The notes: generated by a model from the letters alone, not told the origin. DNA of 64,000 nt from IMGVR_UViG_3300021964_009390:124001-188000, one strand, 5' to 3'. Counted from the stretch's first letter, positions 11,306-34,137 are shown. Program-made: numbers and translations.

Positions 11306-11335
11306 TATTTCTATTTACTCTAATAGTTAATTTAA

Positions 11336-14868: not shown

Positions 14869-14896
14869 CTGAATTATTTATTTATGTAGTTGAATA

Positions 14897-17354: not shown

Positions 17355-18265
17355 AAATTGTACATATACTAGCCACTCCGTGCGCCGGAGCTCCTAGTAC
17401 ATTGTCAAAATATTTAAACAAACTTCCTGGAGTGACTAGTGAGGTACTCACAACCGAGACGACTGATTTGAATGAATGTCGGAGAAAATTACATACAGAT
17501 CAGAATATACAATACAGATTGAATCGAGCGGATGTGTTACATTGGCATAACATGTATATTGAAAACGATTTACATGCCAAGCAATTGGTCACATTCCACA
17601 GTCCACCAGAAAACAGGATGGTACATGACAGTATCAACATGTTAACTAACAACAACAAAGTCAAGAAAACTGTAGTCAGTCACTACCATACATTGTTAGA
17701 TGCGTATTCTGGTTACACTGGTGTGAGAAACATTGTTGATGTTGATGATAGTTATGTTACACCATGCAATCCCAAGCAGCATGTCTTGTTCGGTATGACA
17801 CCCACACCTGAACAGCCTGGTACAATATGGCAAACAAAAGGTTTCGATAAAACTTTGCTCATGATGAAGCGATTGAAAATGAGAAACAGTCGAGTACACT
17901 TTCGTACATTGACCGATGCAACACGTAGTGATTGTTTAGAGTTCAAATCTAATTGTGATTTGGTGATAGATGAATGCGTCACACCAGGGTTTCATTTGTC
18001 CGGACTAGAGGGATTGGCATTAGGTAAACCTACTGTGTGCTGGATTGACGATCGAGTTTGTGACATGTTAAAACGTTTGACTGGTGCTGAGGATGTACCC
18101 TTTATCAGTGACAGCGTATATTGGTTAGAAGACACGCTATACAGGTTACTGGAGCGTGGAGATGATCATTTGCGTGAGGTAGGGTCAAAGAGCCGGGAAT
18201 GGTTTTGCAAATACTGGAAGACATCAGACATATTGAATCAATATGTGCAGTTATATAATGAATGA
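17351..18265 (+). CDS. GT-B/GT4-like glycosyltransferase
   Basis: DVLHWH, TKG, CDLVIDEC..GFHLSGLEGLALGKP. Confidence 0.7.
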   Translation: MKIVHILATPCAGAPSTLSKYLNKLPGVTSEVLTTETTDLNECRRKLHTDQNIQYRLNRADVLHWHNMYIENDLHAKQLVTFHSPPENRMVHDSINMLTNNNKVKKTVVSHYHTLLDAYSGYTGVRNIVDVDDSYVTPCNPKQHVLFGMTPTPEQPGTIWQTKGFDKTLLMMKRLKMRNSRVHFRTLTDATRSDCLEFKSNCDLVIDECVTPGFHLSGLEGLALGKPTVCWIDDRVCDMLKRLTGAEDVPFISDSVYWLEDTLYRLLERGDDHLREVGSKSREWFCKYWKTSDILNQYVQLYNE

Positions 18266-19982
18266 TACATACAAAATAGCTTGGTTATGTCCGACGCGAT
18301 GTCGAGTACATAGTGTGAAAAAACTTATAAAGTCATTAGAAAGTACATGCTCTGCGACGGAAAATTTTGTTTTATATCTAGGTGTAGATCATGATGATCA
18401 TGAAACATTAGAATATTACAAGCAGTACCATCTGTTGAAAAGTTATGTTCAGCTGATCATCATACCTGATCAAAAATGCTTTCCCGGGCTCCCATGGATA
18501 TGGAATTATATGGTATCCCAAACAACAGAATCGCTCATAGGCATGTGCGGTGATGATTTTGTGTTTGAAACAAACAGATGGGACGAGATGATTGTGAATT
18601 ATTGGAGAACTAATTACGTTGATAATGTAGAATTGGTGCACTTCGATGACTGCCTGCAGCTACGTCATTTATCAGACGAAGATAAAACAAAAAAAGAGAA
18701 TCTTCGGTATGTAGTTGCAACTAATTCAATAGTTCATAGAGACACAGTCAATTTGTTAGATGGTTATTTACCACGATATTTCAAACATCTGTTTTGTGAC
18801 ACATGGTTGACAGATGTGTATAATCTTGCCCAGCGATGCACTTTCATGCACAACTTGAAAATTAAACATGAGCATCATAGTATCACCGGAGATGTGGATG
18901 ACACCACACGGAAATTGAAGCAGCATTGCGAGTGGGGCTCCGCATACTCATTGTTCAATTACAAGCAATCAGAAAGAAATGCGCAGGCTAATATACTAAA
19001 AAAACATATCAAATCGTCTGGTCCTGATATTGTAGATAGTAACAGACATGTGTCTACATCTAAAACTAAAGTGTTTGCTAATGTTATGATACGTGATGAA
19101 GAGGTACTCCTGTCGCATGTAGGTAAGGTATGGAAACATTACCCGATTGACAAGTGGGTATTTTATGATGATCAAAGTAGTGATGATACAGTGAATACAA
19201 TTCATCAAATATTCGGTGATCGGGCCGTGGTGTTGCATGACAAGGACCGGAAGACAGAAGCACATATACGTTACGAGATGATACAGTATAGTCATGACAA
19301 TGGATGCTCTGACGGTGTGGTCGTGTCTATAGATACAGATGAGCTGTTGAGTAAATCCATATTGGATGATTTTGACAATATTATTGACTTATCAACAAAA
19401 TATAATTTACAATTATACCAATACAATTGCGCGGGTGATTTATACTATCAGAGAACAGATACAAACTACAAAACGAATCGGCGAGGTTTCCTGGTGTCAT
19501 TGAAACATGCAAATGTTTATGAGATGTGTAAAAATGCACAGTCAAAAGAGGGTTATCATCTGGCAAGAGTACCTAGCGTGAACTTGAAAAGGTTGCAAGA
19601 TGATAGATACGGTTTCATACATTTACAGTCACTCAACACGACATTTTATTACATCAAGCAGATGTGGTACAAACATTATGATTATGTTGAATCTGAAATG
19701 TCCATTGACCAGGTGAATGAGCGTTATGATCCGGTTGTGAACTGGGGAGAGTTTCTCCCGGAACCAATGCCGGAGAACATAATAGATGAGCATATGATGA
19801 AACATATAACACCAGGTATTTTTGATGATGTGTTGAAGAACAAACCACATTACTTGAAATATATATTATACCACCTAGACTCTCGATTGGTTACATTTGG
19901 TCATGACTTGTTTTTGTCAGATGTGTTGAACCCATCTAATGTAAAACAACTAAAGAGTTCAAAATTACAACACTCTGTATAA
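18258..19982 (+). CDS. two-domain GT2-like glycosyltransferase
   Basis: PTR.R..GDD..WD..FCDTW domain followed by RDEE..YDDQSSDDT..IDTDE domain. Confidence 0.75.
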   Translation: MNDTYKIAWLCPTRCRVHSVKKLIKSLESTCSATENFVLYLGVDHDDHETLEYYKQYHLLKSYVQLIIIPDQKCFPGLPWIWNYMVSQTTESLIGMCGDDFVFETNRWDEMIVNYWRTNYVDNVELVHFDDCLQLRHLSDEDKTKKENLRYVVATNSIVHRDTVNLLDGYLPRYFKHLFCDTWLTDVYNLAQRCTFMHNLKIKHEHHSITGDVDDTTRKLKQHCEWGSAYSLFNYKQSERNAQANILKKHIKSSGPDIVDSNRHVSTSKTKVFANVMIRDEEVLLSHVGKVWKHYPIDKWVFYDDQSSDDTVNTIHQIFGDRAVVLHDKDRKTEAHIRYEMIQYSHDNGCSDGVVVSIDTDELLSKSILDDFDNIIDLSTKYNLQLYQYNCAGDLYYQRTDTNYKTNRRGFLVSLKHANVYEMCKNAQSKEGYHLARVPSVNLKRLQDDRYGFIHLQSLNTTFYYIKQMWYKHYDYVESEMSIDQVNERYDPVVNWGEFLPEPMPENIIDEHMMKHITPGIFDDVLKNKPHYLKYILYHLDSRLVTFGHDLFLSDVLNPSNVKQLKSSKLQHSV

Positions 19983-19990
19983 ATAATAAC

Positions 19991-21049
19991 ATGGCCGAAT
20001 CACGTAACATTAAAGATTTACCACAGAGCGATTCCATCGCCGGTGGAGATTATTTTCTAATTGAGACTACTGGTGGAACACAATTGTTAGATTTTGACAA
20101 TTTTGTTATTGATCAGGACAACACCACATTCGCGGTTGATCTACAAACTAATGTCACGTCTCTATCCACACAAGTGGAAACTTTAACAGCAGCAGTCGAC
20201 TTGACCAACCCGGACAGTCCGATATATCTCGTGAACACATCTTTGAATGACTCGTTGAACTTGTTACAATCAAACTTGTATGGTGCCACGTTTGAAGCCA
20301 CACTGCAAGAGACACGCGCAAATTTAGTCAACGACCCGGTTTCAGACGAGAGTCGAGTACTAGACAACAATATGGAGACGTTGAGTGCCATGATTTTCGA
20401 CAGTGTGTATAGTCAGATAACCGCGGCGATCATACCTTTACGTGGTACTGCAGACATTACCAACCGCGCCAATCTCGTGTACAATGGTGGTACAACTTCC
20501 GCTCCGGAAGCGAATGATGGGGGTTTGTTAGGCGCGGTGCTGGACACTGCTTTGGCTAGTGTGGATGTATTCACGAGACAGCCTCAAGGCACCATAACTG
20601 TAGGTTCACCTAGCGTCACGTTCGCGCTAGAAATCCCGGCTAAATACACGGTGAATGCTGGTAGTTTACAGTTTGCAGTACAGTACAGTGGTGGTACAGA
20701 TGCCAAGACCAGGACTGACAATACACCTTACACAAACCCAGGCTTTTTTGCGGTTACAGATTTTGCCAAAGGGGAATTGAAAGATAATGGAGTCGAGTAC
20801 ACATGGACGATCGCTAGATTTGGTGGTAAGAGCTTTGATGATATGGTGGAATACACGTTAATAACTGACGCATCCGGTAATGCACCAACAATACCTATCG
20901 ATACAAACGGTGATGGTATAGATGATTCCACCGGACCGAATCCGGCGCATGATCCAAACAATGGTGGCCGGCAAATCTCTGTTGACGATAGAGAGTCCTT
21001 CCCATTCACTATAAATGCGCGAGTGGTCGCCGGGATTAGTTCAACTTAG
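19991..21049 (+). CDS. putative virion structural (fibre/baseplate) protein
   Basis: N-terminal IKDLP..SI.GGD.FLIET motif common in fibres; acidic and Thr-rich; DTNGDGIDD Ca-binding-like motif; TATAAATA 5 nt upstream. Confidence 0.55.
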   Translation: MAESRNIKDLPQSDSIAGGDYFLIETTGGTQLLDFDNFVIDQDNTTFAVDLQTNVTSLSTQVETLTAAVDLTNPDSPIYLVNTSLNDSLNLLQSNLYGATFEATLQETRANLVNDPVSDESRVLDNNMETLSAMIFDSVYSQITAAIIPLRGTADITNRANLVYNGGTTSAPEANDGGLLGAVLDTALASVDVFTRQPQGTITVGSPSVTFALEIPAKYTVNAGSLQFAVQYSGGTDAKTRTDNTPYTNPGFFAVTDFAKGELKDNGVEYTWTIARFGGKSFDDMVEYTLITDASGNAPTIPIDTNGDGIDDSTGPNPAHDPNNGGRQISVDDRESFPFTINARVVAGISST

Positions 21050-21992: not shown

Positions 21993-22136
21993 TTATTTTT
22001 CAACTTTAGACTTCAATGTGTATAGTATTTTAACCCCTTTAGGTATCTGTTTTTGAAACCATTTACGTACAGATTCTGATGGTGGTAGGCTCGACACTTT
22101 GATCAACACACTTTTAGGTTGCTCGTTACTTTTCAT
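21993..22136 (-). CDS. small hypothetical protein
   Basis: 47 aa from ATG 22136, overlapping the upstream stop. Confidence 0.45.
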   Translation of the reverse strand: MKSNEQPKSVLIKVSSLPPSESVRKWFQKQIPKGVKILYTLKSKVEK

Positions 22137-22503
22137 ATATGTCTCGATGCGCACGTTGAAATTTGCGCATGATGACCCCGGCCAGTGAGTTGGCTTCATT
22201 TTCTATTGGACTACCATCATCACCACACCCTGGTTTCAGACGACCTTGTTCATGTTGTTTAGCATGTACTAGTTCATGTGCTAAGCTTCTCAATATATCA
22301 ACTAGAGCCCGACCACCGCTCATCACTTTTATTTCCCTAGTCATAGGATTGAAACTCCCGGTCGTCATGTCCTGTTCAGGTCTGTCTACAAAACCTATTT
22401 CGCACGGGGTCTGCAGGTTTAAACTATGTTTACAGTACTTGATGAACCTGTCAAGTGTGTCCTTACCTTCATGTAGAAAAACATAGTTTTTAAAACTGTT
22501 CAT
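22126..22503 (-). CDS. HExxH zinc metallopeptidase-like protein
   Basis: LRSLAHELVHAKQ...IENEAN; start MNSFKNY 8 nt below TAAATA. Confidence 0.7.
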   Translation of the reverse strand: MNSFKNYVFLHEGKDTLDRFIKYCKHSLNLQTPCEIGFVDRPEQDMTTGSFNPMTREIKVMSGGRALVDILRSLAHELVHAKQHEQGRLKPGCGDDGSPIENEANSLAGVIMRKFQRAHRDIYEK

Positions 22504-23009: not shown

Positions 23010-23813
23010 TTATACTCCTGTTGTTTGATCCCACGCACTAACATGCAATCTAGTCAATGCCGTATAACCGTATTTTTTACCCATCTCCATACAAAACTGT
23101 GTACGTTCATGATAATCTTCACGTTTGTCTAACCCGGGCATCATCAGCACTCGCTTGGGTTGTATACCGAAAGGTTTGATAAAATCTCTCTCTATTTCTT
23201 CTAAACATGATTCTTCACTTATTACAAACTTGAACCAGTGATTATAGTGCTCCATGATTCTTTCCAATGCGCGTGGTACTATCCGGCGCTTGCTATCCAT
23301 ACCACTGTTAGCTAGTTTTACAGAACAGTTTATTTGATCTAGATGTTCAAATAAATCATCTTCTATATACATGGTACCGTTGGTTTCTATCTCGTTAAAC
23401 AAATATCTACCCTGTGGGCTGTCCTTGATGTCCTGTTCATCATCACCCCATGTAGAATGTTTGTCATAAAACCATTTCAAGAAACCTACGATGGCGCGTT
23501 GGTTTTTGGGTATAGTTGGTTCACCACCAGTCCATATCAAGTTGACTCGACCTTCTTTGATCCAGTCATACACGTTTTGTTCTTTCCACCTATCTACTAG
23601 ATAACTGAAAGGTTTTTCTAGGCCTTTCTTCCACACATACTCTGTGTCACACCACCATGTTGCTTGGCCTGACTTCATCAGGCTACCGTCGACACCTCCG
23701 CACATCAAGTTACATGCTTTGAGTCGTATGAAGTACGCTGGTACACCACTGGTTTGACCTTCACCTTGAACGCTGTAAAAATCTTCTGAAATGTTTAATG
23801 TATCTATTTCCAT
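23010..23813 (-). CDS. queE: 7-carboxy-7-deazaguanine synthase QueE (radical SAM)
   Basis: FYSVQGEG..SG.PA.FIRL..CNL.C...(insert)...WCDT, TGGEP, ETNG, RLHV. Confidence 0.9.
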   Translation of the reverse strand: MEIDTLNISEDFYSVQGEGQTSGVPAYFIRLKACNLMCGGVDGSLMKSGQATWWCDTEYVWKKGLEKPFSYLVDRWKEQNVYDWIKEGRVNLIWTGGEPTIPKNQRAIVGFLKWFYDKHSTWGDDEQDIKDSPQGRYLFNEIETNGTMYIEDDLFEHLDQINCSVKLANSGMDSKRRIVPRALERIMEHYNHWFKFVISEESCLEEIERDFIKPFGIQPKRVLMMPGLDKREDYHERTQFCMEMGKKYGYTALTRLHVSAWDQTTGV

Positions 23814-23817
23814 ATAT

Positions 23818-24525
23818 TTAAAATAACCACGTGTTTTTAGTTTTACCACTATATTTTGGATCCACCCATTTACCCACTGTCTTGTTTTGAGCATCTTTCA
23901 ATTTAGGTGGAGGTGTTTTGAATGGTGGCTTGGTAATTTTTTTAGCATTATCATCCTGTTGTTTGATTTCTTGCGCGACCGATTCTTCAGAAGTCTCAAC
24001 AGACTCGCGAGTCTCTTCATGATGTTCTTGTTCTAGTGTCGATAGGTAACTGTCACTAGAGATATATGTATCTGATGTCTTTTCGCTCCCCGGAAATTCT
24101 TGATATACAGCTGAGTTGTCCTGGTGTTCAAACACCTCTACTTTGACACATCTGCACCTGAGCTTGGTTATCACACCTACATAATTGTCTGCTGCTGAAT
24201 GGCACCATTCAGCGAATTTCTCTATACCCACACCATCCATCACGCGCAAGTCACACACACCGGCTTGGTCTAGTTGCTTGAACACGCTTAATTTAGGATC
24301 ATCACTAGATATACAAGTGGTATGATCAAATTGTTGTTTGAGCAGTGCTTTAAATTCTTTAAAATTACCGAAGTCTACAACCCAGTTGTTTTCGTCTAAA
24401 GTTTCTGCCGCAAACCAGAATTTAGCTTTGAGTTGGTAGCCATGTATGAATCTACAATGGCTAGTGGCTCTTGGTTGTCTAAACGCGCAGCTACCTAGTT
24501 CAATAGTTTTTGTACTGTAATGCAT
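23818..24525 (-). CDS. queD: 6-carboxytetrahydropterin synthase QueD with C-terminal extension
   Basis: SHCRFIHGY, WVVDFG, FDHT, EVFEH..NSA. Confidence 0.88.
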   Translation of the reverse strand: MHYSTKTIELGSCAFRQPRATSHCRFIHGYQLKAKFWFAAETLDENNWVVDFGNFKEFKALLKQQFDHTTCISSDDPKLSVFKQLDQAGVCDLRVMDGVGIEKFAEWCHSAADNYVGVITKLRCRCVKVEVFEHQDNSAVYQEFPGSEKTSDTYISSDSYLSTLEQEHHEETRESVETSEESVAQEIKQQDDNAKKITKPPFKTPPPKLKDAQNKTVGKWVDPKYSGKTKNTWLF

Positions 24526-24563: not shown

Positions 24564-25622
24564 TTAATTCCCAGTGAAATGTTTCGGATCAAATTTATAT
24601 CCTCTGTTATTGATGTTCTTACCAACATGACCGACATCATGCGCGATCTTGTCCCACATGTCATCTAGAGAGTCAAAACCATAAAAATCTTTAATTTTGT
24701 TTCGCTCAGCAATAGATTTTTCTACCCCGGTGGTGATTAAACGATTGATAAGCTCTTTAGCTTGATGAACATTTTTGAATGAGTCAAATTCGTACCATCT
24801 CCTATTCAAAGCTTGAGATATGTATGATAACCAGATGTATTTTGGGTCGACCATGGTCATGGTTTCTGCTGGTACCAGCTTGTCTCGCTCCGGTGGTATT
24901 CCGGCTTGACCAGGTTGACGAGTTTTATCATTAGGACCACGTTCTAACATATTTAAAAAATATCTATAATCACCACTACCGCTTGATGCTGACGATTGTG
25001 CAGAACTTACATCAATGTCACCGAAGGGTGTGGGTAGTCTTGTTGTATCAGGGTCTGCCAGAATTTCTAGTATATTTTTTGTTTTCTGTTCCGGACGAGC
25101 AGCAATCTCATTTCTCAATTTAGGAAATATTTTATGCGCGTCAATCATAGACTTTAACGCGGACAAACCTTGCTTTTCCGAATCATCAACATCAGACATG
25201 TAGTCTTTAAATGTACCAGGTTCAGACGATTCAGGCTCCTCAGCTGTTTCCGGTTTCTTAGGTGGTTCTGGTTTCTTGACCGGTTCAGGTTTCTTGACCG
25301 GTTTCTCATCTTTTCCACCTAGTATGTCTCGAATCGGGTGATCGTTAGATACATTCACATTAGTACTACTGATTGGTTTTTTAGGTTTGTAGTTGTCTAC
25401 AGTACCGTCTAGAGGTGCCAATTGTACCGGGAGGTTGGGTATAGTTGAATCCGGTCGTCGGCGAGGTTTTTTAGGTTCATCATCTTGCTCATCCTTGAAA
25501 CCACTTGTAAAATCTTTCCCAGCGGTTTTGATACGATCATAAGCTTTACCTAGCAATTTACCAGCATCTTTAGCAAACCCTTCAGTGTAGTTCTCGTATA
25601 TTGCCTGTTGATCACGGTCCAT
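24564..25622 (-). CDS. hypothetical late protein with Pro/Lys-rich linker
   Basis: 352 aa; MDRDQQAIYENYTE N-terminus; KPEPVK repeats. Confidence 0.7.
   Translation of the reverse strand: MDRDQQAIYENYTEGFAKDAGKLLGKAYDRIKTAGKDFTSGFKDEQDDEPKKPRRRPDSTIPNLPVQLAPLDGTVDNYKPKKPISSTNVNVSNDHPIRDILGGKDEKPVKKPEPVKKPEPPKKPETAEEPESSEPGTFKDYMSDVDDSEKQGLSALKSMIDAHKIFPKLRNEIAARPEQKTKNILEILADPDTTRLPTPFGDIDVSSAQSSASSGSGDYRYFLNMLERGPNDKTRQPGQAGIPPERDKLVPAETMTMVDPKYIWLSYISQALNRRWYEFDSFKNVHQAKELINRLITTGVEKSIAERNKIKDFYGFDSLDDMWDKIAHDVGHVGKNINNRGYKFDPKHFTGN
25264..25305. repeat. imperfect 18-bp coding tandem repeat (KPEPVK)
   Basis: GGTTCTGGTTTCTTGACC GGTTCAGGTTTCTTGACC GGTTTC. Confidence 0.7.
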
Positions 25623-25624: not shown

Positions 25625-26143
25625 TTACAGGTCCAGTGGACTTTTAATATTTCTAGGTGGTGGTGTATCATCATCATCGTCATCATCTAGATCTAGTATA
25701 CTTTTTTTACGTTTCGGTTTACTCTCGGATGGTTCATATTTAAACCTATCATCTTTAGATGGACCATCACCCTGTACATCGTATCCAGGGAATGCACTTT
25801 TGTATGAATTCAATATACCAGGATTGACTCTATCACAAAAATCAGAATTCCGAGTTATATATACTCCTTTTTTCATTTGTCTGAACATCCAAAGCAACTC
25901 CTGTGTGGCACATGGACAGCCATCAAGAGCTCTGTGGATAACCTCTCTCTTGACCACATCATCTTCTGTAACTAGCAGTGGACTGGCTAGAATCTCAGAA
26001 CCCATACGCTCCAGTCTCTCTTGAGAGATGTTCATGTCTGGGTCTTCCGGATTGTTCGTCTCCCCGGGTTGTGAGAAGCGGACTTCATTGACATGTTCAG
26101 CACCTTTTACTAGCTGTTTTATTTTACTAAGTTTATCATTCAT
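25625..26143 (-). CDS. hypothetical late protein
   Basis: Likely start MNDKLSK at 26143, below TAAATA at 26155-26160. Confidence 0.65.
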   Translation of the reverse strand: MNDKLSKIKQLVKGAEHVNEVRFSQPGETNNPEDPDMNISQERLERMGSEILASPLLVTEDDVVKREVIHRALDGCPCATQELLWMFRQMKKGVYITRNSDFCDRVNPGILNSYKSAFPGYDVQGDGPSKDDRFKYEPSESKPKRKKSILDLDDDDDDDTPPPRNIKSPLDL

Positions 26144-26153: not shown

Positions 26154-27809
26154 TTATTTAGTTGAACTGGCTGTAGAACCACTGGTACTACCTGCACCTA
26201 AACTAGGAGCTTGCTTTGCCGGTGATACACTACCTGCACCTAAACTCGGTGCTTGCGGCGACGGGGTGGGAACACCTGGTCCTAGATTTGGAGCTTGTTT
26301 GGCCGGTTTGCCCGGTTTTTTCGAACCACCACCTCCTCCACCTCCAGTCACGGGTGAGGGTTGAGTTGTTACAGGGGGTTTCGGAAGCGGTACTCTGCTA
26401 CCTCCATCACTTCCAACTCTGCTACCACCGGGTTTGCGTCCTGGTATTTCAACTGGTGTTTTTGGAAATTGTTCAGTGTCCGGTTCACCTTCAGGGGTAT
26501 TGGTCGGTGGTGGTGCCGGGTCTGCATCTGGTTCGGATTCTACTTCCGGGTCTGCTTCAGCATATTTTATGACAGCCATGGCCACTTCTTTGACTGATCG
26601 TGTATCCATCAAACCACTCTCTCTAGCTGCCAATCCAATGGCACCTAGACCTAGCATGGATACAGCTGATTTGTCTGGTTCAAGATTTAAAATTTTAGCC
26701 ATTACATTGTCGAATTCATCAGGAAACTCTGGTTCAAAAATTATAGGAGGAAAATAGTCTTTTTGAATTTTTCTGTAGATCTTCCAGCGACTAGTGTTGT
26801 CTCCTGGATCCTTTTTGTTCATTATACCATAAACACCTCCTATTTTGACACGACGTTCAATTTGATCTAACAATCTGTATCGTTCTAATAACGCCTTGAT
26901 CGCTGGATGGTTCATCAGTTTGCCTATAGTCAGTCTAAATCCAGGGTCACGCTTCTCATCATCTGTTTGAGCGCCAAACCCGTGTTCACCTTCATGTGAT
27001 TCTGGACTACCTTCTTCTGGTGGTTGCTCTCGCTTCATGCTACCGGGCTTGTATTTCGCTCGTTTTTCACGTTTTTTGTCACGTGACTGTCTCATTTTAC
27101 TCTTCCGGTTTTTTCTGGCTTCCTCTAGATTCTCTTCCGGTTTCAATTTGAAATCGTCTGGGTTGTTAGGGTCTTTATCACCTATGTTGGGTATGATAGT
27201 TTTGACTCGTAATGTTATTGGTCTGGAGTATGCATTGGAGCTGTTGGCTGAGTTTGCAGTACCATACAATACCAACAGTTGATTGTTGGGTATGTCTAGA
27301 TGGTCAAATTCAAAGTAATACGGATCCGCGTTGGCCATGCCAGTGTTAATTTTACCAAACTCACGTATTTTACCTGTCTCGTCCTCGTACTGACCTTGCC
27401 TGACGGGTAACACAGGTGCACCTTGTTTGTATATTTTCTTGAGTGATTTAAAGGTGTTCATACCACGTTGAACGCTTTTCCAGAAACCTTTTTGTTTTGC
27501 AGCGCCATGCACTCCAGTTCCTAGTTGGTCATGATGAGCATCCGGGTCTTTCAATCGGTCAGCAGTACCTGGGTTTTGTCTGTCCATCACCTCATCACTG
27601 GTGGTAGTCAATATGTTACCTTCCGCATCCTGAGGTGCGCGGATTTTTTGATCTCCAGTCTCACCACTAGGTTCTAATTGACCCTTCAGTTTGCTATCTT
27701 CTCTGTCGCTAGATATTTTTTGTTTTGCGTCATTAACTTCATCCTCGTCATAGCCGTATTTGTCTATACCCTCGACAAGATTTTTAATTTTCTTGAAATG
27801 TTTGTTCAT
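26154..27809 (-). CDS. large low-complexity late protein
   Basis: 551 aa; MNKHFKKIKNLVE N-terminus; Pro/Gly-rich tail with QAPSLGAG repeats. Confidence 0.7.
   Translation of the reverse strand: MNKHFKKIKNLVEGIDKYGYDEDEVNDAKQKISSDREDSKLKGQLEPSGETGDQKIRAPQDAEGNILTTTSDEVMDRQNPGTADRLKDPDAHHDQLGTGVHGAAKQKGFWKSVQRGMNTFKSLKKIYKQGAPVLPVRQGQYEDETGKIREFGKINTGMANADPYYFEFDHLDIPNNQLLVLYGTANSANSSNAYSRPITLRVKTIIPNIGDKDPNNPDDFKLKPEENLEEARKNRKSKMRQSRDKKREKRAKYKPGSMKREQPPEEGSPESHEGEHGFGAQTDDEKRDPGFRLTIGKLMNHPAIKALLERYRLLDQIERRVKIGGVYGIMNKKDPGDNTSRWKIYRKIQKDYFPPIIFEPEFPDEFDNVMAKILNLEPDKSAVSMLGLGAIGLAARESGLMDTRSVKEVAMAVIKYAEADPEVESEPDADPAPPPTNTPEGEPDTEQFPKTPVEIPGRKPGGSRVGSDGGSRVPLPKPPVTTQPSPVTGGGGGGGSKKPGKPAKQAPNLGPGVPTPSPQAPSLGAGSVSPAKQAPSLGAGSTSGSTASSTK
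26187..26305. repeat. imperfect coding repeat, about 42-bp unit (PAKQAP.LG.G)
   Basis: CTACCTGCACCTAAACT at 26187 and 26229, with a third degenerate copy. Confidence 0.6.
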
Positions 27810-28219: not shown

Positions 28220-28241
28220 TACAATTATTTATGTTTAATAC

Positions 28242-28276: not shown

Positions 28277-28921
28277 ATGGATTACGTAAAATTACAATAC
28301 GCTAACGGTAATCATCCTAGAACACCAGAAGAGCGAGAGAAAATTATAGATAATGCAGCAAAAGCATATGAAGCATACATGGATGCATTATGTTTTGATT
28401 GGAGATCAGACCCTAACAGCGCTGACACACCCAGACGTGTGGCAAAAGCTTTTGTAAATGATCTTGCGGCTGGTTGTTATACTGAACCCCCTAACATCAC
28501 TACATTTGATAATGTAGATCAATACGATGGTTTAGTATTTCAGGGTAATATAAAGACTAACTCGTTTTGTTCACATCATCATTTACCTTTTATAGGACAG
28601 ACGCATGTAGCTTACATACCAGGTAAAGATGGTAAGGTGATCGGGTTGAGTAAATTGAACAGAATAGTCGAGTGGTTCTCTCGTAGACCACAAGTTCAAG
28701 AAAATTTAACCATGCAGGTACATAAGTATATCAATCAAGTATGCGAAGGTAATAACGGTGTTGCGGTGTTAGTTGAAGCTAACCATACATGTGCTGGACT
28801 GAGAGGTATCAAGCATGATAGTACTATGAAAACAGCTCGTATGAGTGGGGCATTTTTAGATAAAAAGGATATTAATACACGACAAGAATTTTACGACTTT
28901 GTAAGAGATTTAAAACGATGA
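28277..28921 (+). CDS. folE: GTP cyclohydrolase I
   Basis: DTPRRVAKA, SFCSHHHLPF, VIGLSKLNR, RRPQVQE, H.C...RG. Confidence 0.95.
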   Translation: MDYVKLQYANGNHPRTPEEREKIIDNAAKAYEAYMDALCFDWRSDPNSADTPRRVAKAFVNDLAAGCYTEPPNITTFDNVDQYDGLVFQGNIKTNSFCSHHHLPFIGQTHVAYIPGKDGKVIGLSKLNRIVEWFSRRPQVQENLTMQVHKYINQVCEGNNGVAVLVEANHTCAGLRGIKHDSTMKTARMSGAFLDKKDINTRQEFYDFVRDLKR

Positions 28922-29073
28922 AAACTATATTTGATAAAGTTGATACAAAATATTTAGATTGTACATCAGGTACATGTGAGCATGTAGCTCATAATTTTAA
29001 CGGTATACTGTTAGTCACTATTGCATTAGCAATCGTGACTGTAAAAGTATATCAATATTTAAACACCAGATAA
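28918..29073 (+). CDS. 51-aa putative membrane peptide (not in ORF track)
   Basis: ATGA overlap with folE stop; MKTIFDKVDTKYLDCTSGTCEHVAHNFNGILLVTIALAIVTVKVYQYLNTR. Confidence 0.55.
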   Translation: MKTIFDKVDTKYLDCTSGTCEHVAHNFNGILLVTIALAIVTVKVYQYLNTR

Positions 29074-29640
29074 TATACGTTTCACTTGTTCCGGATCTAC
29101 ATGTTCTGGTATATCTGAGACAAACACACTTGGATCGTCAATATTGTTACGTATATTAGATGCGCTGTAAGGTGTTCCGTCAGGCTTGTTTAATATATCA
29201 ACAGCTGTAAGTTGTGGGTCTAATACCTCCACGTTCAATTGTTTAGAATCTGCCCATTTCTTAGCACCAGACCATCTCTTCCAGTCATTGTCTTTCTTAC
29301 TCGCACCAAGTATCACACGTTTACCGTTCAAAGTTTCGAGTGCTAGATACGCAGCTCCTACCGGACTAGGTTGAGGGCTGATCTCTACAGTCACGTTGGG
29401 TAAGTTTGAAACATATAATTCAAATATTTTTTTAGACATTTCTGGAGTTATCACCTGGCCAGTCTTGGTCTTTCTCACACTCTTCTCACTAGGAGCAGAT
29501 ATCAACACCACAACATCATCAGCCATGCCAGAGTAGATGCTCACCATTTGATAATGACCTTTATGCGGTGGTTTGAAGCTTCCAGGTACTAAAGCAATGT
29601 CAGCGCCGGTAGTAACATAATCTTTAAAGCTAGGTATCAT
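29059..29640 (-). CDS. HxGH nucleotidyltransferase (cytidylyltransferase-like)
   Basis: PGSFKPPHKGH and YSASNIR signature. Confidence 0.85.
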   Translation of the reverse strand: MIPSFKDYVTTGADIALVPGSFKPPHKGHYQMVSIYSGMADDVVVLISAPSEKSVRKTKTGQVITPEMSKKIFELYVSNLPNVTVEISPQPSPVGAAYLALETLNGKRVILGASKKDNDWKRWSGAKKWADSKQLNVEVLDPQLTAVDILNKPDGTPYSASNIRNNIDDPSVFVSDIPEHVDPEQVKRILSGV

Positions 29641-30011
29641 TACATGTCTTTATGTAGTGACCAATCAACTGATCCTAGACCTTCGTTACGTATCAAATCA
29701 ATACCGGTCGCACGTACTCCTGGTTTACCTGGGTCCATATCATTTATCAAGAATCTAGGACCTCTCTCGATCTCCATGATCAGTCTATCATACACAATAT
29801 TATTCTCCGCTAGCTCTTTGACTGTATGATCTCTTAAATATTCCGGTCTGGCTGTAGTTAATATTATCATATGACCTAGATCTTTCCAATAATTCATTTT
29901 ATCGACAACTCCAGACAGGACTTTTGGTTTAGATGTCATGTACGTTTCAAACTTACGATACTCAAATAGAGTACCATCAATATCACAAAATATAGTGTTT
30001 TTCTTTTCCAT
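29640..30011 (-). CDS. HAD-family phosphatase (Pnkp-phosphatase-like)
   Basis: FCDIDGTL, LTTARP, IND. Confidence 0.8.
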   Translation of the reverse strand: MEKKNTIFCDIDGTLFEYRKFETYMTSKPKVLSGVVDKMNYWKDLGHMIILTTARPEYLRDHTVKELAENNIVYDRLIMEIERGPRFLINDMDPGKPGVRATGIDLIRNEGLGSVDWSLHKDM

Positions 30012-30014
30012 AAA

Positions 30015-31283
30015 TTACCCAAATTTTTTATTAGGATCAAAATTGGCTTTACTAAACTCTAGTCTATCGACTAATTTCACTGCGTTACCTATATGATCAA
30101 CTGCGACAAAACCTTCCGGTTTAGTGACTTTGAAACTACCGTCTTCTTGCTCTATGAAGCTGTCCATTGCTCTTAAATTTGACAATTTGTTTACAAAGAT
30201 ATTTTTAATCTGCATCAATTTTAAATATAAATCGTACATCATCTGTATATTGGATGTGTTTTGCTCTAGAAAATGAACACCACGTTCCATAGCCTCACGC
30301 TTGCGTGTTTGTCCAGCTTCTGTTTTGAGTTTGTCTATTGCTGCAGTGGTTTTGTTGATATATCGCTCCATGAAACTGTTTGCAAATTTAACAGAATCTG
30401 CTTCGAATTCACCTTGAGTTTTTATCGCGCTGTTTATATGAGCTTTGAGTTCAACTTTTAAATCTGATATATGTTCTGTGTCATTTAAAAATTCAAACAC
30501 ATGTTTTATTTGCCAGAAATGATTCCTACATTCACGTATCTTTTCTGTTATGCTGGCTGACTCTTCTGGTGTCAAGTGTATCTGCCCACTCACATCTTTG
30601 AATGTTGCATCATCAAACCAAACGCTGCTATGCTCTGTGAGTCTGTTGGCTTTGAAACCAAATGTAGCTCCCATGTCATGTATTGTAGGACCACCGGTGT
30701 ACATGGTGTGAAACACAATACCCATGTCTGATTTCAATATTCGTTGGGCGAGCTCCGTGTCAGTTGGTACCGCATAAGAGATTGTGTTAGGTTTGAACAC
30801 TAGATGTTCCTTACCATCGATGGTGGCGCGCCTGATAGAATCTTTTGTATACAGCATGTCTCCTTGTAACACATAACCATCTATGTCGAGATGTTTCAAA
30901 CATTTAAACGCTGTTTTGAGTTTTTTTCTCAACATGCTTTTGTCTTGTTTCGAGTCACCACGCTTCACATCACCATGATTACGATTTATATCCGTGACAC
31001 GTTTGTTCATTTTGGGTATTTTTCCGAATACCGCTTTTGTACCTACGAAAAATCGTCCATCTGCTGGGTCAGTACCACAAAAAATTGCTGGTGCTCCATC
31101 CCATTTTGTTGTTATATCCACCGGATTGGTAGCATGACCTTTGAGTGTATCTAGTAGACCGGTGAACATAGAGAACGCTTGTTCTACACCGTTTTCACCT
31201 AGATTTATCAGTTCATCCTCGATGTGCTCTAGATGAGTGTTTTTACTCTCTACATGTAATACATACTCTTTGAATGTGAACAT
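30015..31283 (-). CDS. DUF6267-like protein with ATP-dependent ligase/capping nucleotidyltransferase motifs
   Basis: NTHLEHIED, KWDG (motif I), GDMLY (III), EGFV (IV), VKLVDR (V). Confidence 0.75.
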   Translation of the reverse strand: MFTFKEYVLHVESKNTHLEHIEDELINLGENGVEQAFSMFTGLLDTLKGHATNPVDITTKWDGAPAIFCGTDPADGRFFVGTKAVFGKIPKMNKRVTDINRNHGDVKRGDSKQDKSMLRKKLKTAFKCLKHLDIDGYVLQGDMLYTKDSIRRATIDGKEHLVFKPNTISYAVPTDTELAQRILKSDMGIVFHTMYTGGPTIHDMGATFGFKANRLTEHSSVWFDDATFKDVSGQIHLTPEESASITEKIRECRNHFWQIKHVFEFLNDTEHISDLKVELKAHINSAIKTQGEFEADSVKFANSFMERYINKTTAAIDKLKTEAGQTRKREAMERGVHFLEQNTSNIQMMYDLYLKLMQIKNIFVNKLSNLRAMDSFIEQEDGSFKVTKPEGFVAVDHIGNAVKLVDRLEFSKANFDPNKKFG

Positions 31284-31291
31284 AACATTAT

Positions 31292-32809
31292 TTATGCTCT
31301 CACACCAATACCAATACCTTTGTTACGTGAATCAACACCGGCATTCTGCACCACAATGTCTGGATTGTTCACAAGTTGCCTGTATACAGACAGCAATTGT
31401 TGACCGGCATCGTTGCTAGGGTCAAATTTGATGTTACTCGCGTTCATTGTAGTTGGGTTCAATACTAGTATTCTATCAAATTTATCAACTGATTGATAGG
31501 AAGTCGCTTGCAAAGCAGCTTGCAAGGTTTGTAATGTGTGTTGACCTAGTGATTTCCCGCGACTCACTTGCTTGCTTATGTTGGTGAGTTGATCTTTAAA
31601 CTCGACTTTGCGAAATATTTTCTCGAGCGCGGAAATTAATGAAGCTACAGAACCCGGGTCCATTTCCTCTGTTCTCATCTCTACAAATATCTCGGCTAGC
31701 TCCCGAGGTGTCATGCCCCAGTCATGATTGAACATGTACTGCGCGCTGTCTTGCCAGTTGTAATCCATACTGTCTGTGCTCAATCCGCTCAGCCTGTCTA
31801 GTCGATTGAATATATAGCTCATGTTTTTTACAAACGTCATTTTAGGTTGTAATGGGACCCCTTCTCCAAGTTTGTCATACCCTATCTGTAAATTGTTTTT
31901 TATTATGTCAATATTGATAGTACGTTTTGCATCTTGTAAGGATTCTAGATTTTTCAACAGCTGCTCGATTGGTCCGTTGAGTTCTAGAGTGTCTTCAGTC
32001 GGATTTTTTAGAAATTTGTTCTTGAACGTGTTTACATTTTTCAATGTCTCTTTCGCTTTAATTGACAGTTCTTTACGTATGATTGGTGTTTCTGCTTGTG
32101 AGAAGTGCTGACCGGTACCTCGGTTCACCAGCGTGTTGATATACTTGCTACCACCATCTCTACCGATGCCTTTGGTGTAATCGCTCTTACCTAGGCGACC
32201 ACCGGCTCCTTTTATCTCCAGTTCCATATCACCAATTCTTAGATCACCTACAGCACCTTTGACTGCGTTAGTGAACATGGTTAGACTAACTTCACCCGGA
32301 CCTACACTCACGGTGTTTATTTTGGGTTGTACTTTGAAGGTGAGTTCCTTGAACAATTGTTTGAAATTTTTAGTCAACTTGTGTGCCAGCGGGTCCACAG
32401 CATCATACAGGCTCCACACACCGGGTTTGTTCACATGTGACTCTAGTTTACCTAAAGAGCTTCCAGGGTTCTTTTTCTTCTCCACAAGCTTGTTCAACAC
32501 TTGTACATCAATGTCATATCCTAGAAATATCTCCAGTACCAACGTGTCGATCTCTGGTATCTCTTCCCATTGACCAAGTCGGAGCAACTGTTTCACTAGA
32601 TTTTCAACCCCACCATCAGCTTTGCTCAACACCAAACGTTTCAATTGCTGATAATAATCATCAGGTATGGCTCCTAGTTGCTCTTGAGTACCACCTTGAG
32701 GTACTCCGATTATTTCCACACTCTCGTTGACAGGTGTACGTGATTCTGCATACACATCTTTCAACGACTTGTATTTAAAAGGTTTCTTCGATGGTGGTAG
32801 ATAGTTCAT
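31292..32809 (-). CDS. PD-(D/E)xK nuclease-like late protein
   Basis: VGPGEVSL...GDLRIGDMELEIKG..GRL restriction-endonuclease-like motif. Confidence 0.55.
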   Translation of the reverse strand: MNYLPPSKKPFKYKSLKDVYAESRTPVNESVEIIGVPQGGTQEQLGAIPDDYYQQLKRLVLSKADGGVENLVKQLLRLGQWEEIPEIDTLVLEIFLGYDIDVQVLNKLVEKKKNPGSSLGKLESHVNKPGVWSLYDAVDPLAHKLTKNFKQLFKELTFKVQPKINTVSVGPGEVSLTMFTNAVKGAVGDLRIGDMELEIKGAGGRLGKSDYTKGIGRDGGSKYINTLVNRGTGQHFSQAETPIIRKELSIKAKETLKNVNTFKNKFLKNPTEDTLELNGPIEQLLKNLESLQDAKRTINIDIIKNNLQIGYDKLGEGVPLQPKMTFVKNMSYIFNRLDRLSGLSTDSMDYNWQDSAQYMFNHDWGMTPRELAEIFVEMRTEEMDPGSVASLISALEKIFRKVEFKDQLTNISKQVSRGKSLGQHTLQTLQAALQATSYQSVDKFDRILVLNPTTMNASNIKFDPSNDAGQQLLSVYRQLVNNPDIVVQNAGVDSRNKGIGIGVRA

Positions 32810-33282
32810 GTGTTTATATTAACATCACTATATTTTTTCATCAACTGTATAAATTTATTCAACATGCCTTTGCGGTTGTTCTCGTTGATTGAATTCATGG
32901 CATCATGCACACTCTCGATACGATCCTCGTTATCACCACGGGTCTGTTGATTGTTGATGATGCTCAAGATGTCCTGTTTGACTTGCTCTGCATTTTCTTG
33001 ATTTATCTCCGGTTGGTCTATCTTGCTCAAGGTGCTCAAGTCAGAATCTTCGATATTTATGACCAGAGCTTTGAGCAACAAGCGTACCAGTGTAACTTCT
33101 GCTGCTGGTGACAGATTGGCTGGTGGGCTAGCGTCTGGTTGTTCCCCAGCGCCTGGCGCTGGACTAGGAGGTGGTGCTCCCGGGGCTGGTGCTGGTGCAG
33201 CAGCTTCCGGTGGTGGTGCGCCTGCTTCTGGTTGCTCACTAATTCCAACTAGTTCGTTGATCAACGAGTTGAAATTTTTCAT
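32806..33282 (-). CDS. hypothetical late protein, Pro/Ala-rich
   Basis: MKNFNSLINE N-terminus. Confidence 0.7.
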   Translation of the reverse strand: MKNFNSLINELVGISEQPEAGAPPPEAAAPAPAPGAPPPSPAPGAGEQPDASPPANLSPAAEVTLVRLLLKALVINIEDSDLSTLSKIDQPEINQENAEQVKQDILSIINNQQTRGDNEDRIESVHDAMNSINENNRKGMLNKFIQLMKKYSDVNINT

Positions 33283-33551
33283 CAAGCTCCCATTTGTTTG
33301 GCTTTGTCTCTGCTGCTTTGAGCAGTAGATTGTGCTTTTTGAGTACGAGCACCGGCAAGTTCTTGACGTGCAGACTGAGCGTCAGTTTCCGCGTCATGAG
33401 CGGTGTCCTCAGCTTTGTCAGTTTGTTGTTTAGCTGCTTGGATCTCTTTCTCTTGATCAGCATTATCTTTCTCAGTCTCGTCTTCTTCCGCCTCGAGGGC
33501 GATGCCAAGTCGGTTGTATTGATCTTCTATGATTTGTTCGAAACGTTTCAT
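33282..33551 (-). CDS. small acidic coiled-coil late protein
   Basis: MKRFEQIIE; TAAATA 5 nt upstream. Confidence 0.7.
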   Translation of the reverse strand: MKRFEQIIEDQYNRLGIALEAEEDETEKDNADQEKEIQAAKQQTDKAEDTAHDAETDAQSARQELAGARTQKAQSTAQSSRDKAKQMGA

Positions 33552-33582
33552 GATATTATTTATGTTATGATGTTGTATTTAT

Positions 33583-34137
33583 CTAGATTAACACTTGTTT
33601 GAGTCGTTGATTGTCGAAGAAATCTCTTGACAACCCGGTCAACCCATGTTTTTCAACATGCTTCTTCATTTTATATAAATTGTATGTTTGATCGTTATGT
33701 ATCTCGCTCAACAACTCGATTGTTTCACCGTCTCTACTGTTCACAAGATTTTTAAACTGGTCAAAATCTACACACGACACGTGATATTTGATACCGATTG
33801 CTGATTTCATGAACTTGAACAGACTGATCATAAATTCACTCAACGGTTGTTTAGTGTAATATTGACTCAATTCAATTTGATTTAATTTAGATCTATCGAT
33901 GTACATGACTGGTCGTTCATGAGATGCTTTAAAAGATAGAATAAAATCACACACACTACTGAATATATGATGCGATGTAGCTACATGAACATCGTTTTGA
34001 AATTTATCCGCGTCGATCGGACTAATACCGTGATCGTACAGCTCATCGACGATGTCAATCGAACGATCCGTACAGAAGTAACTAGTATAATCGATTATAT
34101 TTATATTAAACCGGTCAACGACGGTATTTCTCAGCAT
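33583..34137 (-). CDS. hypothetical protein
   Basis: Likely start MLRNTVV at 34137, below TTGCAA-16-TATAAT (34147-34174). Confidence 0.6.
   Translation of the reverse strand: MLRNTVVDRFNINIIDYTSYFCTDRSIDIVDELYDHGISPIDADKFQNDVHVATSHHIFSSVCDFILSFKASHERPVMYIDRSKLNQIELSQYYTKQPLSEFMISLFKFMKSAIGIKYHVSCVDFDQFKNLVNSRDGETIELLSEIHNDQTYNLYKMKKHVEKHGLTGLSRDFFDNQRLKQVLI

What the first reader, a model, noticed from the sequence alone, without database searches (positions are those of the whole stretch)
29059..31294. Late operon: ligase-fold nucleotidyltransferase + HAD phosphatase + HxGH nucleotidyltransferase
Seen: TAAATA at 31289 drives three abutting genes. The first has covalent-nucleotidyltransferase motifs (KWDG, GD, EGFV, VKL), the second DxDGT, and the third HKGH/SAS; the first and third have CTS-like leaders. 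Known: T4 Rnl1 plus Pnkp (DxDGT phosphatase) heal and seal nuclease-cut tRNA, and HxGH enzymes make NAD or CDP-activated metabolites. Inference: an uncharacterised, possibly virion-delivered module for RNA end repair, capping, or nucleotide/NAD counter-defence, in which the HxGH enzyme may supply the ligase-like protein's substrate.
Basis: partly seen in the sequence, partly recalled or inferred. Interest (0 to 1): 0.72.

Follow-up and report, generated by a model that had tools for sequence, protein, structure and literature searches.

The report
Ligase-like enzyme paired with adenylyltransferase
A marine T4-like phage carries a late-expressed gene pair, a previously unrecognised RNA-ligase-like enzyme (DUF6267) and a PPAT/NMNAT-like adenylyltransferase, which are neighbours or fused in thousands of ocean phages, while the small phosphatase between them is only a local insert.

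Summary
Three abutting minus-strand genes follow a CATAAATA box: A (422 aa, 30015-31283), B (123 aa, 29640-30011) and C (193 aa, 29059-29640).

C is an HxGH nucleotidyltransferase whose closest structures are PPAT. It fits no specific enzyme family.

A and C are truly linked. They are adjacent across cyanomyoviruses, and 23 of 42 long DUF6267 proteins carry the HxGH domain, in both orders.

B is not part of the module. The slot holds nothing, a glycosyltransferase or a fusion in close relatives.

The promoter box is one of 36 in the genome lying about 5-10 nt before a start codon. Shared N-terminal leaders resembling T4's capsid-targeting sequence, and published virion proteomes containing C homologues, make packaging plausible but unproven.

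The T4 Rnl1-Pnkp analogy, capping and NAD salvage are not supported. The substrate remains unknown.

The parts
31289..31296 (-). CATAAATA, a T4-type late-promoter-like box ending 5 nt before A's ATG and overlapping the stop codon of the upstream gene
   Evidence: Sequence read. It is one of 16 such boxes 5-10 nt before a start codon in the window (0.44 expected) and one of 36 within 12 nt genome-wide. A gp55-like sigma factor is found by BLAST to the S-SZBM1 protein.
30015..31283 (-). Gene A, 422 aa, Pfam DUF6267: predicted lysine nucleotidyltransferase with an RNA-ligase-like fold. It has a beta-rich core (residues about 50-235), a helical-bundle insert (about 239-367) and C-terminal strands carrying the motif IV- and V-like residues.
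31245..31283 (-). Codons 1-13 of A: an N-terminal leader resembling the T4 capsid-targeting sequence, ending in Glu just before the conserved KNTHLEH motif
   Evidence: T4 ipII and ipIII start MKTYQEFIAEA. 116 of 120 A homologues have a leader of 13 or more residues (mostly 13-48) before KNTHLEH. The same leader type occurs on six or so other proteins of this genome. pLDDT is under 50 for residues 1-15.
31095..31106 (-). Codons for K60-W-D62-G63, the motif I-like site; K60 is the predicted nucleotidyl acceptor
   Evidence: Invariant in alignments A1, A2 and A5. It lies in a loop between two predicted strands (56-59 and 66-71), as motif I does in ligases.
30063..30116 (-). Codons for E390-G-F-V (motif IV-like) through K403-L-V-D-R407 (motif V-like)
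   Evidence: E390, G391, V393, K403 and R407 are invariant. They lie on predicted strands 392-395 and 401-404. The structural alignments to Rnl2 end just after this segment.
29640..30011 (-). Gene B, 123 aa: a capless HAD phosphatase (DIDGT). It is a lineage-specific cassette in the A-C junction.
   Evidence: Pfam LNS2_PITM1-3 at 38 bits (cut-off 27.7); HAD_PNKP at 23 bits (below its cut-off). PDB Pnkp1 4xrp at E 0.009. Absent between A and C in L004; replaced by Gly_transf_sug in L092 and L093.
29059..29640 (-). Gene C, 193 aa: HxGH nucleotidyltransferase (H26-K-G-H29; S159-A-S-x-x-R164), PPAT/NMNAT-like, specificity unknown
   Evidence: Pfam CTP_transf_like at 26 bits, cut-off 21. AlphaFold2 pLDDT 92.7. 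The top 39 Foldseek PDB matches are PPAT, E from 5e-6. NCBIfam: only the generic domain model passes its cut-off.

Best explanation
Genes A and C form a conserved two-enzyme nucleotidyl-transfer system of marine T4-like myoviruses. Gene B is an unrelated cassette that landed between them in this lineage.

A (DUF6267) is a very divergent member of the covalent lysine nucleotidyltransferase (polynucleotide ligase) superfamily. It takes a nucleotidyl group onto K60. By analogy with Rnl2, Rnl5 and REL1 it passes that group to a 5'-phosphate end and seals a nick. Its helical insert would play the nucleic-acid-binding role that other ligases give to a separate domain.

C is a minimal PPAT/NMNAT-like HxGH adenylyltransferase that works with A. 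The most likely coupling is that C makes or regenerates, from ATP, the AMP-containing donor that A consumes, as NMNAT does for NAD-dependent ligases.

The genes are transcribed late from a gp55-type box that leaves almost no 5' leader. A and C carry N-terminal leaders like the T4 capsid-targeting sequence. They are therefore probably loaded into the head and act at the start of the next infection.

Shown here: the gene layout, the motifs and their invariance, the predicted folds, the A-C synteny and fusions, the variability of the B slot, and the positional enrichment of the box. Inferred: covalent catalysis, a nucleic-acid substrate, the donor relay, and packaging.
For: Fold of A:
- The model has pLDDT 87.
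- Foldseek also lists DNA and RNA ligases, weakly.
- The polar invariant residues fall where ligase motifs I, III, IV and V fall, even in the 298-aa cyanophage form.

Fold of C.

A-C coupling:
- A C-like gene lies on the same strand downstream of A, or is fused to it, in 23 of 47 IMG/VR loci with at least 3 kb of downstream sequence.
- A and C have matching distributions and adjacent coordinates in isolate phages. A is in 463 records and C in 556; the Cyanophage (61), Prochlorococcus (24) and Methylophilales (4) counts are identical and the Synechococcus counts are close (364 against 375).
- 23 of 42 DUF6267 proteins of at least 500 aa contain the HxGH domain. The order is A-C in P0401, P0420, P0461, P0038 and others, and C-A in P0405, P0340, P0440 and others.

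B as a cassette.

Late expression. The prohead protease gp21 is present.

Packaging:
- Leaders are shared by unrelated proteins of this genome and occur family-wide.
- T4 CTS comparison.
- The C homologue S-SZBM1_140, which starts MRFRQFIIEA, and S-CREM2 ORF154 were detected in purified virions (PMC9146016; PMC10665884).
Against: - No sequence method links A to ligases. The Pfam scan of 42 members at E<=10 found no ligase family. hhalign against T4 Rnl2 and against an Rnl2-family profile gave probability 0.2%. phmmer against PDB found nothing.
- Motif V is K-x-x-x-R, not K-x-K. Motif III has Asp, not Glu.
- There is no OB or other known nucleic-acid-binding domain.
- The A homologue was not listed in the two cyanophage virion proteomes, and cyanophage A proteins lack the leader.
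- In A-C fusions the C 'leader' is internal, so for C it may be structural rather than a targeting signal.
- C also occurs without A (jumbo enterobacterial phages, Lak, Flavobacterium phages). It is fused to many unrelated enzymes.
- The complex prediction gave no answer.
Confidence: 0.45

Rival explanations
1. A and C are independent 'polyvalent-type' effectors. Each does its own job against the host, and they are neighbours or fused only because both are loaded into the capsid and delivered together.
For: C-family proteins are fused to many unrelated enzymes: RimK ATP-grasp with a Zn protease, PAP2 with a Pol-beta NTase, a zeta-toxin-like kinase, DUF192 with HNH, and DUF5824. A is also fused to Cu/Zn superoxide dismutase and to other extensions. 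A small HExxH metallopeptidase in this genome carries the same leader as A. This pattern matches the concept described in PMC5512222.
Against: More than half of the long DUF6267 proteins in hand are fused specifically to the HxGH domain, and in both orders. Adjacency is near-universal in cyanomyoviruses. That specificity is not expected of random co-cargo. Neither domain is mentioned in PMC5512222.
Confidence: 0.22
2. A is the missing replicative DNA ligase of marine T4-like phages. It would replace gp30 in joining Okazaki fragments, with C regenerating its cofactor.
For: The gp41 helicase lies about 1.4 kb upstream of A in 53 of 83 loci (annotations). [quoted passage not shown]
Against: Stenotrophomonas phage DLP6 and the 142-kb contig behind L083 have both a PF01068 ligase and DUF6267. 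In the window A sits among late genes behind a late-type box and carries a leader. Its best structural matches are RNA ligases rather than DNA ligases. It has no OB domain.
Confidence: 0.15
3. The genes form an NAD+ counter-defence module. C is an NMNAT that restores NAD+ after host NADase defences act, and A is NAD+-dependent or unrelated.
For: C hits PHROG 'nicotinamide-nucleotide adenylyltransferase' at E 1e-5. Some sources name its homologues NMNAT. PMC10665884 calls the cyanophage protein an NMNAT homologue.
Against: The complete 222-kb genome has no Nampt (PF04095). C scores far below every NMNAT equivalog cut-off. Its closest structures are PPAT, with NaMNAT first appearing at rank 40.
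Confidence: 0.08
4. The three genes are a T4-like heal-and-seal RNA repair set, with B as the 3'-phosphatase and A as the ligase, rescuing tRNAs cut by anticodon nucleases.
For: B is a capless HAD with weak similarity to the Pnkp phosphatase domains. A resembles RNA ligases.
Against: B is not conserved next to A. A-C-B includes no 5'-kinase. The HAD_PNKP score is below its cut-off. B's phage relatives sit among sugar-nucleotide genes in Tetrasphaera phage TJE1.
Confidence: 0.05

Closest known systems
Nick-sealing RNA ligases: T4 Rnl2, Naegleria NgrRnl (Rnl5), Trypanosoma REL1
   Different: There is no detectable sequence or profile similarity. An insert of about 130 residues (helical bundle) separates motif IIIa from motif IV. 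There is no C-terminal or OB domain. Motif V is K...R and motif III is G-D. A carries an N-terminal leader and is recurrently fused to an HxGH enzyme.
Phosphopantetheine adenylyltransferase (CoaD) and NMN/NaMN adenylyltransferases
   Same: C has the HxGH Rossmann fold, the H-x-G-H and S-x-S-x-x-R motifs, and a similar size. PPAT structures are its best matches (TM 0.55-0.70).
   Different: Identity is 14-19%. C scores far below the equivalog cut-offs (CoaD 32 against 103 bits; NMNAT 22 against 127). It has an extra N-terminal segment. Most family members have T-x-G-H in the motif FGRFNPPTxGH. It is phage-specific and often multidomain.
T4 internal proteins and Alt, loaded into the head by a capsid-targeting sequence and cut by gp21
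   Same: Short N-terminal leaders of similar pattern are shared by unrelated late proteins. One homologue starts MKTYQRFMTE, against T4's MKTYQEFIAE. A Glu lies at the leader/domain junction. gp21 protease is present. C homologues occur in virions (PMC9146016, PMC10665884).
   Different: Neither cleavage nor packaging has been shown for this phage. The junction in A (L-H-V-E|S) does not fit L/I-x-E exactly. Cyanophage A proteins lack the leader.
T4 Rnl1 + Pnkp tRNA repair; bacterial Pnkp1-Rnl-Hen1
   Same: A ligase-like gene lies next to a DxDGT HAD phosphatase. B's second-best PDB match is Pnkp1.
   Different: There is no kinase. B is a cassette that is not conserved with A. The conserved partner of A is the HxGH enzyme, which those systems lack.
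Polyvalent proteins of phages and conjugative elements (Iyer et al. 2017, PMC5512222)
   Same: Both involve late-gene context, variable multidomain fusions of enzymatic domains, and presumed delivery with the DNA.
   Different: DUF6267 and the HxGH domain are not among the domains found in that paper's text. In the window the domains are separate genes.

Membership tests
Covalent nucleotidyltransferase superfamily (ATP/NAD+ ligases, capping enzymes) | Nucleotidyltransferase-domain fold | tested here: met
Covalent nucleotidyltransferase superfamily (ATP/NAD+ ligases, capping enzymes) | Motif I lysine (KxDG) and motifs III, IV and V conserved | tested here: met
   K60, D62, G63, Q140, D142, E390, G391, K403 and R407 are invariant in alignments A1, A2 and A5. 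Variant forms: G-D in motif III and K-x-x-x-R in motif V. The residue-by-residue correspondence to a solved ligase was not available.
Covalent nucleotidyltransferase superfamily (ATP/NAD+ ligases, capping enzymes) | Detectable sequence or profile homology to a ligase family | tested here: not met
   The Pfam scan of 42 members at E<=10 found no ligase family. hhalign against Rnl2 gave probability 0.2%. phmmer against PDB found nothing.
Covalent nucleotidyltransferase superfamily (ATP/NAD+ ligases, capping enzymes) | Formation of a covalent enzyme-NMP intermediate | not testable with these tools
   Needs labelling of the purified protein.
Rnl2 / Rnl5 / Rnl1 RNA ligase families | Family-specific accessory domain (Rnl2 C-terminal domain PF18043, Rnl5 N-terminal OB-like domain, Rnl1 tRNA-binding domain) | tested here: not met
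   No such Pfam domain is found. A has an internal helical insert instead.
HxGH (cytidylyltransferase-like) nucleotidyltransferases | Rossmann fold with H-x-G-H and the C-terminal S-x-x-x-x-R motif | tested here: met
   PF01467 at 26 bits, above its cut-off of 21. TIGR00125 at 29.5 bits, above 27.7. The motifs are invariant. Foldseek probability is 1.00 to PPAT.
PPAT (CoaD) or NMNAT (NadD/NadM/NadR) equivalogs | Score above the curated equivalog cut-off | tested here: not met
   CoaD 32.3 bits against 103.3; NMNAT models 16-22 bits against 112-341.
HAD phosphatases | The four HAD motifs, including DxDG(T/V) | tested here: met
   DIDGT at residues 10-14, T52/T53, and N-D-x-D at 90-93 are read from the sequence. 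Several HAD Pfam families are hit.
Polynucleotide kinase-phosphatase (Pnkp) | Phosphatase domain above the family cut-off, together with a P-loop 5'-kinase domain | tested here: not met
   HAD_PNKP scores 23.1 bits against a 27.6 cut-off. B is 123 aa with no kinase domain, and neither A nor C is a kinase. No polynucleotide-kinase family was searched genome-wide.
T4-type CTS-targeted internal head proteins | An N-terminal targeting peptide shared by unrelated proteins, removed by gp21, with the protein found in virions | tested here: inconclusive
   Shared leaders and gp21 are present. Virion detection is published only for C homologues in two cyanophages (PMC9146016, PMC10665884). There are no data for this phage.
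NARP2-type NAD+ reconstitution (Nampt + Nmnat) | Nampt present together with Nmnat | tested here: not met
   PF04095 is absent from the complete 222-kb genome, while the same search found it in 8 of 14 control genomes.

The most novel reading that the evidence does not exclude
DUF6267 together with the HxGH enzyme is a new kind of two-component polynucleotide ligase, found in nearly all marine T4-like cyanophages and many other phages. The adenylyltransferase makes or recycles a private AMP donor for a ligase-fold enzyme. Both proteins are loaded into the capsid through a CTS-like propeptide. The incoming genome therefore brings its own end-sealing activity, independent of host NAD+ and ligase.
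Probability: 0.15. Interest if true: 0.85.

Novelty: new variant of a known kind. Interest (0 to 1): 0.64.

Why it matters
DUF6267 and the long-misnamed 'cytitidyltransferase' are present in nearly every cyanomyovirus genome in the isolate collection (463 and 556 phage records). In metagenomes DUF6267 forms about 3,300 clusters at 50% identity, yet its function is unassigned: no paper in the searched library mentions it.

Recognising one partner as a ligase-fold lysine nucleotidyltransferase, and showing that the two are fused again and again, turns two anonymous core genes of the ocean's most abundant myoviruses into a defined hypothesis. A few biochemical assays could test it.

It also bears on two further questions. 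One is how T4-like phages that lack gp30 handle DNA or RNA ends. The other is whether marine T4-like phages use a T4-style targeting peptide to load enzymes into their heads.

Tried and rejected
- Sequence routes from A to ligases all failed: phmmer against PDB, Pfam on 42 members at E<=10, and hhalign against T4 Rnl2 alone and against a 17-member Rnl2 alignment. The last homologous-protein search, on Rnl2, returned only close relatives of at least 55% identity, so that profile was shallow.
- Foldseek against PDB and Swiss-Prot gave only E>0.02. The top rows were long helical proteins (Rad50, CorA), probably attracted by the helical insert.
- The ESM Atlas searches returned only DUF6267 clusters.
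- The complex prediction for A+C gave 'no answer' and is not used as evidence.
- The upstream 505-aa gene was tested as a third conserved partner. It has no family, and BLAST finds no similarity among the genes upstream of A in five phages. It was dropped.
- A heptose or sugar-nucleotide role for B+C was considered because of a PHROG name, the TJE1 context and the glycan cluster at 4.6-20 kb. It was rejected as the main reading because C travels with A, not with B.
- Strict complementarity between DUF6267 and gp30-type ligase was rejected by two genomes that have both.
- The sigma-70 promoter and terminator scans were at chance level.
- No RNA run holds this DNA. Contigs of relatives in metatranscriptome libraries cover parts of A and the upstream genes but cannot show transcription or 5' ends.
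- One paper on Syn9 transcription was not held.


Full report
**What is there**

The window is bases 124001-188000 of a 222,461-bp virus record that CheckV rates complete. The DNA occurs in estuary and marine metagenomes. The phage is a T4-like myovirus. It has:
- a gp43-type polymerase, gp46/47-like nuclease subunits, helicases and large terminase;
- prohead protease gp21;
- a gp55-like late sigma factor, major capsid, sheath and tube proteins.

Its nearest isolates are Kyanoviridae, Pelagibacter phage HTVC008M, Methylophilales phage Melnitz and Stenotrophomonas phage DLP6.

Three genes lie on the minus strand: A (31283->30015, 422 aa), B (30011->29640, 123 aa) and C (29640->29059, 193 aa). 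A and B are 3 nt apart. B's stop overlaps C's start.

**The promoter box**

CATAAATA at 31289-31296 ends 5 nt before A's ATG. The overall count of ATAAATA is not significant, but its position is.
- In the window, 16 of 43 copies lie 5-10 nt upstream of a start codon in the sense orientation, against 0.44 expected.
- In the whole genome, 36 of 119 lie within 12 nt of a start. These include the genes for very large proteins and the gene just before the sheath gene.

With gp55 present, this is a T4-type late box that would leave almost no 5' leader. No further box precedes B or C, so co-transcription with A is likely. Read-through from the upstream same-strand genes is also possible.

**Gene A**

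A is Pfam DUF6267 (E 1e-101) and PHROG 455, both of unknown function.

The family is large. An exhaustive profile search found 3,325 clusters at 50% identity. The taxa recorded for its clusters are viral. No paper in the library mentions DUF6267.

Alignments of 42-50 members, and of distant cyanophage, Melnitz and DLP6 proteins, show these invariant residues:
- H17, L18, H20 and E22 (the KNTHLEHxED motif);
- K60, D62 and G63;
- Q140 and D142;
- F163, P165, N166, T167 and Y170;
- H192, T193 and Y195;
- K280, N284 and K360;
- E390, G391 and V393;
- K403 and R407.

They hold even in the 298-aa S-RIM2 form, which lacks most of the helical insert.

The AlphaFold2 model (pLDDT 87, pTM 0.80) has three parts: a beta-rich core, a helical bundle at residues 239-367, and C-terminal strands that carry E390-G and K403.

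Foldseek gave only weak hits, though ligases were among them. A Foldseek-independent scan of 48,161 PDB representatives put ten RNA ligases in the ten top places:

I therefore file A as ligase-fold with good but not conclusive support. It is not a member of any described ligase family.

**Gene C**

C passes the generic HxGH models (PF01467, TIGR00125). It fails all PPAT and NMNAT equivalog cut-offs. Its model (pLDDT 92.7) matches PPAT structures best, with NaMNAT first at rank 40. H26-x-G-H29 and S159-A-S-x-x-R164 are invariant.

Most relatives next to DUF6267 in other phages have the variant FGRFNPPTxGH. This is the protein annotated 'cytitidyltransferase' in cyanophage genomes.

**A and C belong together**

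- Among 83 IMG/VR loci holding an A homologue, a C-like gene lies on the same strand within 2.5 kb downstream, or is fused, in 23 of the 47 loci that extend at least 3 kb, and in 17 of 31 that extend at least 5 kb.
- Among isolates, A is found in 463 records and C in 556. The cyanophage and Methylophilales counts are the same or nearly the same, and the coordinates are adjacent.
- Of 42 DUF6267 proteins of at least 500 aa that I had in hand, 23 contain the HxGH domain. Some have the order A-C and others C-A, with strong E-values on both sides. Atlas clusters show the same fusion.

Repeated fusion in both orders argues that the two act together rather than merely travelling together.

C also occurs without A in jumbo enterobacterial phages, Lak phages and a Flavobacterium phage.

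**B is a cassette**

B has the HAD motifs and no cap. It shows weak similarity to LNS2 and Pnkp-type phosphatase domains. The slot it occupies varies among relatives:
- In a relative whose A is 81% identical (L004), A is followed directly by C.
- In other relatives at 81% identity (L092, L093), the slot holds a 251-aa glycosyltransferase.
- In P0038 the two genes are fused.
- Elsewhere the slot holds small unrelated ORFs.

Only two further loci had any HAD-like gene nearby. The 'heal and seal' reading therefore loses its healing enzyme.

**Packaging**

T4 ipII and ipIII begin MKTYQEFIAEA. The evidence for packaging is as follows.
- 116 of 120 A homologues carry a leader of 13 or more residues (mostly 13-48). 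It starts M-(K/R)-h-x-(E/D)-(I/L) or MxxFKxY, and ends in Glu-(Ala)-(Glu/Lys)-Gly just before KNTHLEH.
- Many C homologues have similar leaders directly before the first strand. One reads MKTYQRFMTE.
- In this genome the A-type leader recurs on unrelated proteins, including a 125-aa HExxH metallopeptidase.
- A second leader type (M-x-D-(K/R)-D-x-x-(L/I)-(I/F)-(F/W/Y)-E-(S/N)-(Y/F)) is shared by six proteins, where none is expected by chance.
- Published proteomes found the cytidylyltransferase in CsCl-purified virions of S-SZBM1 (gene 140, together with gene 139) and of S-CREM2 (ORF154, together with ORFs 155 and 156) (PMC9146016, PMC10665884). S-SZBM1_140 begins MRFRQFIIEA.

The evidence against is as follows.
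- The A homologue of S-SZBM1 (37% identical, no leader) is not in its virion list, and no protein encoded just upstream of ORF154 is in the S-CREM2 list. Whether that upstream gene is a DUF6267 homologue was not checked.
- In A-C fusions, C's leader motif is internal.

Packaging is therefore plausible, with stronger support for C than for A.

**What the pair does**

The DNA-replication reading rests on two points. gp41 lies just upstream of A in 53 of 83 loci. Four of five checked genomes have no canonical ligase. However, DLP6 and a 142-kb contig have both a canonical ligase and DUF6267, and the window copy sits among late genes.

NAD salvage lacks Nampt.

The reading I commit to has three parts. 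A is a nucleotidyl-lysine enzyme acting on polynucleotide ends. C is coupled to it as the maker or recycler of its AMP donor. Both are made late and probably packaged. The donor relay follows the precedent of NMNAT and NAD-dependent ligases. It is an inference, not a result.

I put overall confidence in the full chain at about 0.45. For the individual claims I estimate:
- the fold: about 0.8;
- the A-C functional link: about 0.8;
- late expression: about 0.7;
- packaging: about 0.5.

Noticed in passing
window-wide, e.g. 14875-14885(-), 19978-19985(+), 28226-28233(-), 33557-33564(-), 47111-47118(-), 59313-59320(-), 59327-59334(+), 60852-60859(+): NATAAATA boxes sit only 5-10 nt before ATG codons: 16 in the window and 36 genome-wide. 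This implies near-leaderless late mRNAs with no room for a Shine-Dalgarno sequence. The capsid, protease, sheath, tube and terminase genes have no box within 40 nt of their own starts.
   Followed up: partly
window 24564-25622(-), 45710-47101(-); genome C1 45290-46057, 59790-60215, 60516-61043, 101373-102239: Six otherwise unrelated proteins share a second N-terminal leader, M-x-D-(K/R)-D-x-x-(L/I)-(I/F)-(F/W/Y)-E-(S/N)-(Y/F). None is expected by chance. It may be a second class of targeting or propeptide signal.
   Followed up: partly
window 22126-22503(-): A 125-aa protein has an HELVH (HExxH) zincin motif and the same leader type as gene A (MNSFKNYVFLHEGK). It follows an AATAAATA box. It is a candidate packaged metallopeptidase.
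   Followed up: no
window 23010-24525(-) and 28277-28921(+): QueE-like, QueD-like and GTP cyclohydrolase I genes (7-deazaguanine precursor synthesis) are interleaved with the late-type genes. The same FolE gene is convergent with C in the relatives L004, L092 and the P0038 contig.
   Followed up: no
window 4633-20000: This is a glycan-synthesis cluster. It holds two GT2-type glycosyltransferases, a GT-D-like protein, two NAD-dependent epimerase/dehydratases, WcbI, an RgpF-like protein and a 579-aa glycosyltransferase.
   Followed up: no
window 26154-27809(-), 32806-33285(-), 25625-26143(-): These are low-complexity late-type proteins: a 551-aa protein with a Gly/Pro/Ser-rich tail and a 158-aa protein with an Ala/Pro-rich segment. 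Both begin with CTS-like leaders and neither has a family match. The 551-aa gene is a 991-aa ORF in relative L004.
   Followed up: no
loci L033, L047, L049, L057, L050, L001, L029 (IMG/VR and Melnitz): HxGH proteins next to DUF6267 are often 500-1,135 aa long and fused to other domains: DUF5824, DUF192 with HNH, RimK ATP-grasp with a Zn-protease, PAP2 with a Pol-beta nucleotidyltransferase, or a zeta-toxin-like kinase with DUF6321.
   Followed up: partly
ESM Atlas clusters; proteins P0046, P0048, P0084; loci L012, L019: DUF6267 is also fused to Cu/Zn superoxide dismutase (a cluster of 65 members), to an N-terminal domain of about 120 aa of unknown type, and to C-terminal extensions of about 230 aa.
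   Followed up: no
window 28918-29073(+): A 51-aa ORF with a hydrophobic C-terminal stretch is start-coupled to the FolE stop and overlaps the 3' end of gene C by 15 nt. A similar 46-aa gene is called at the same place in relatives L092 and L093.
   Followed up: no
window 28900-33700: Contigs from four marine and salt-marsh metatranscriptome libraries, 80-90% alike, cover parts of A, the 505-aa gene and the 158-aa gene. One 2.9-kb contig spans all three. The tool warns that DNA can be present in such libraries.
   Followed up: partly
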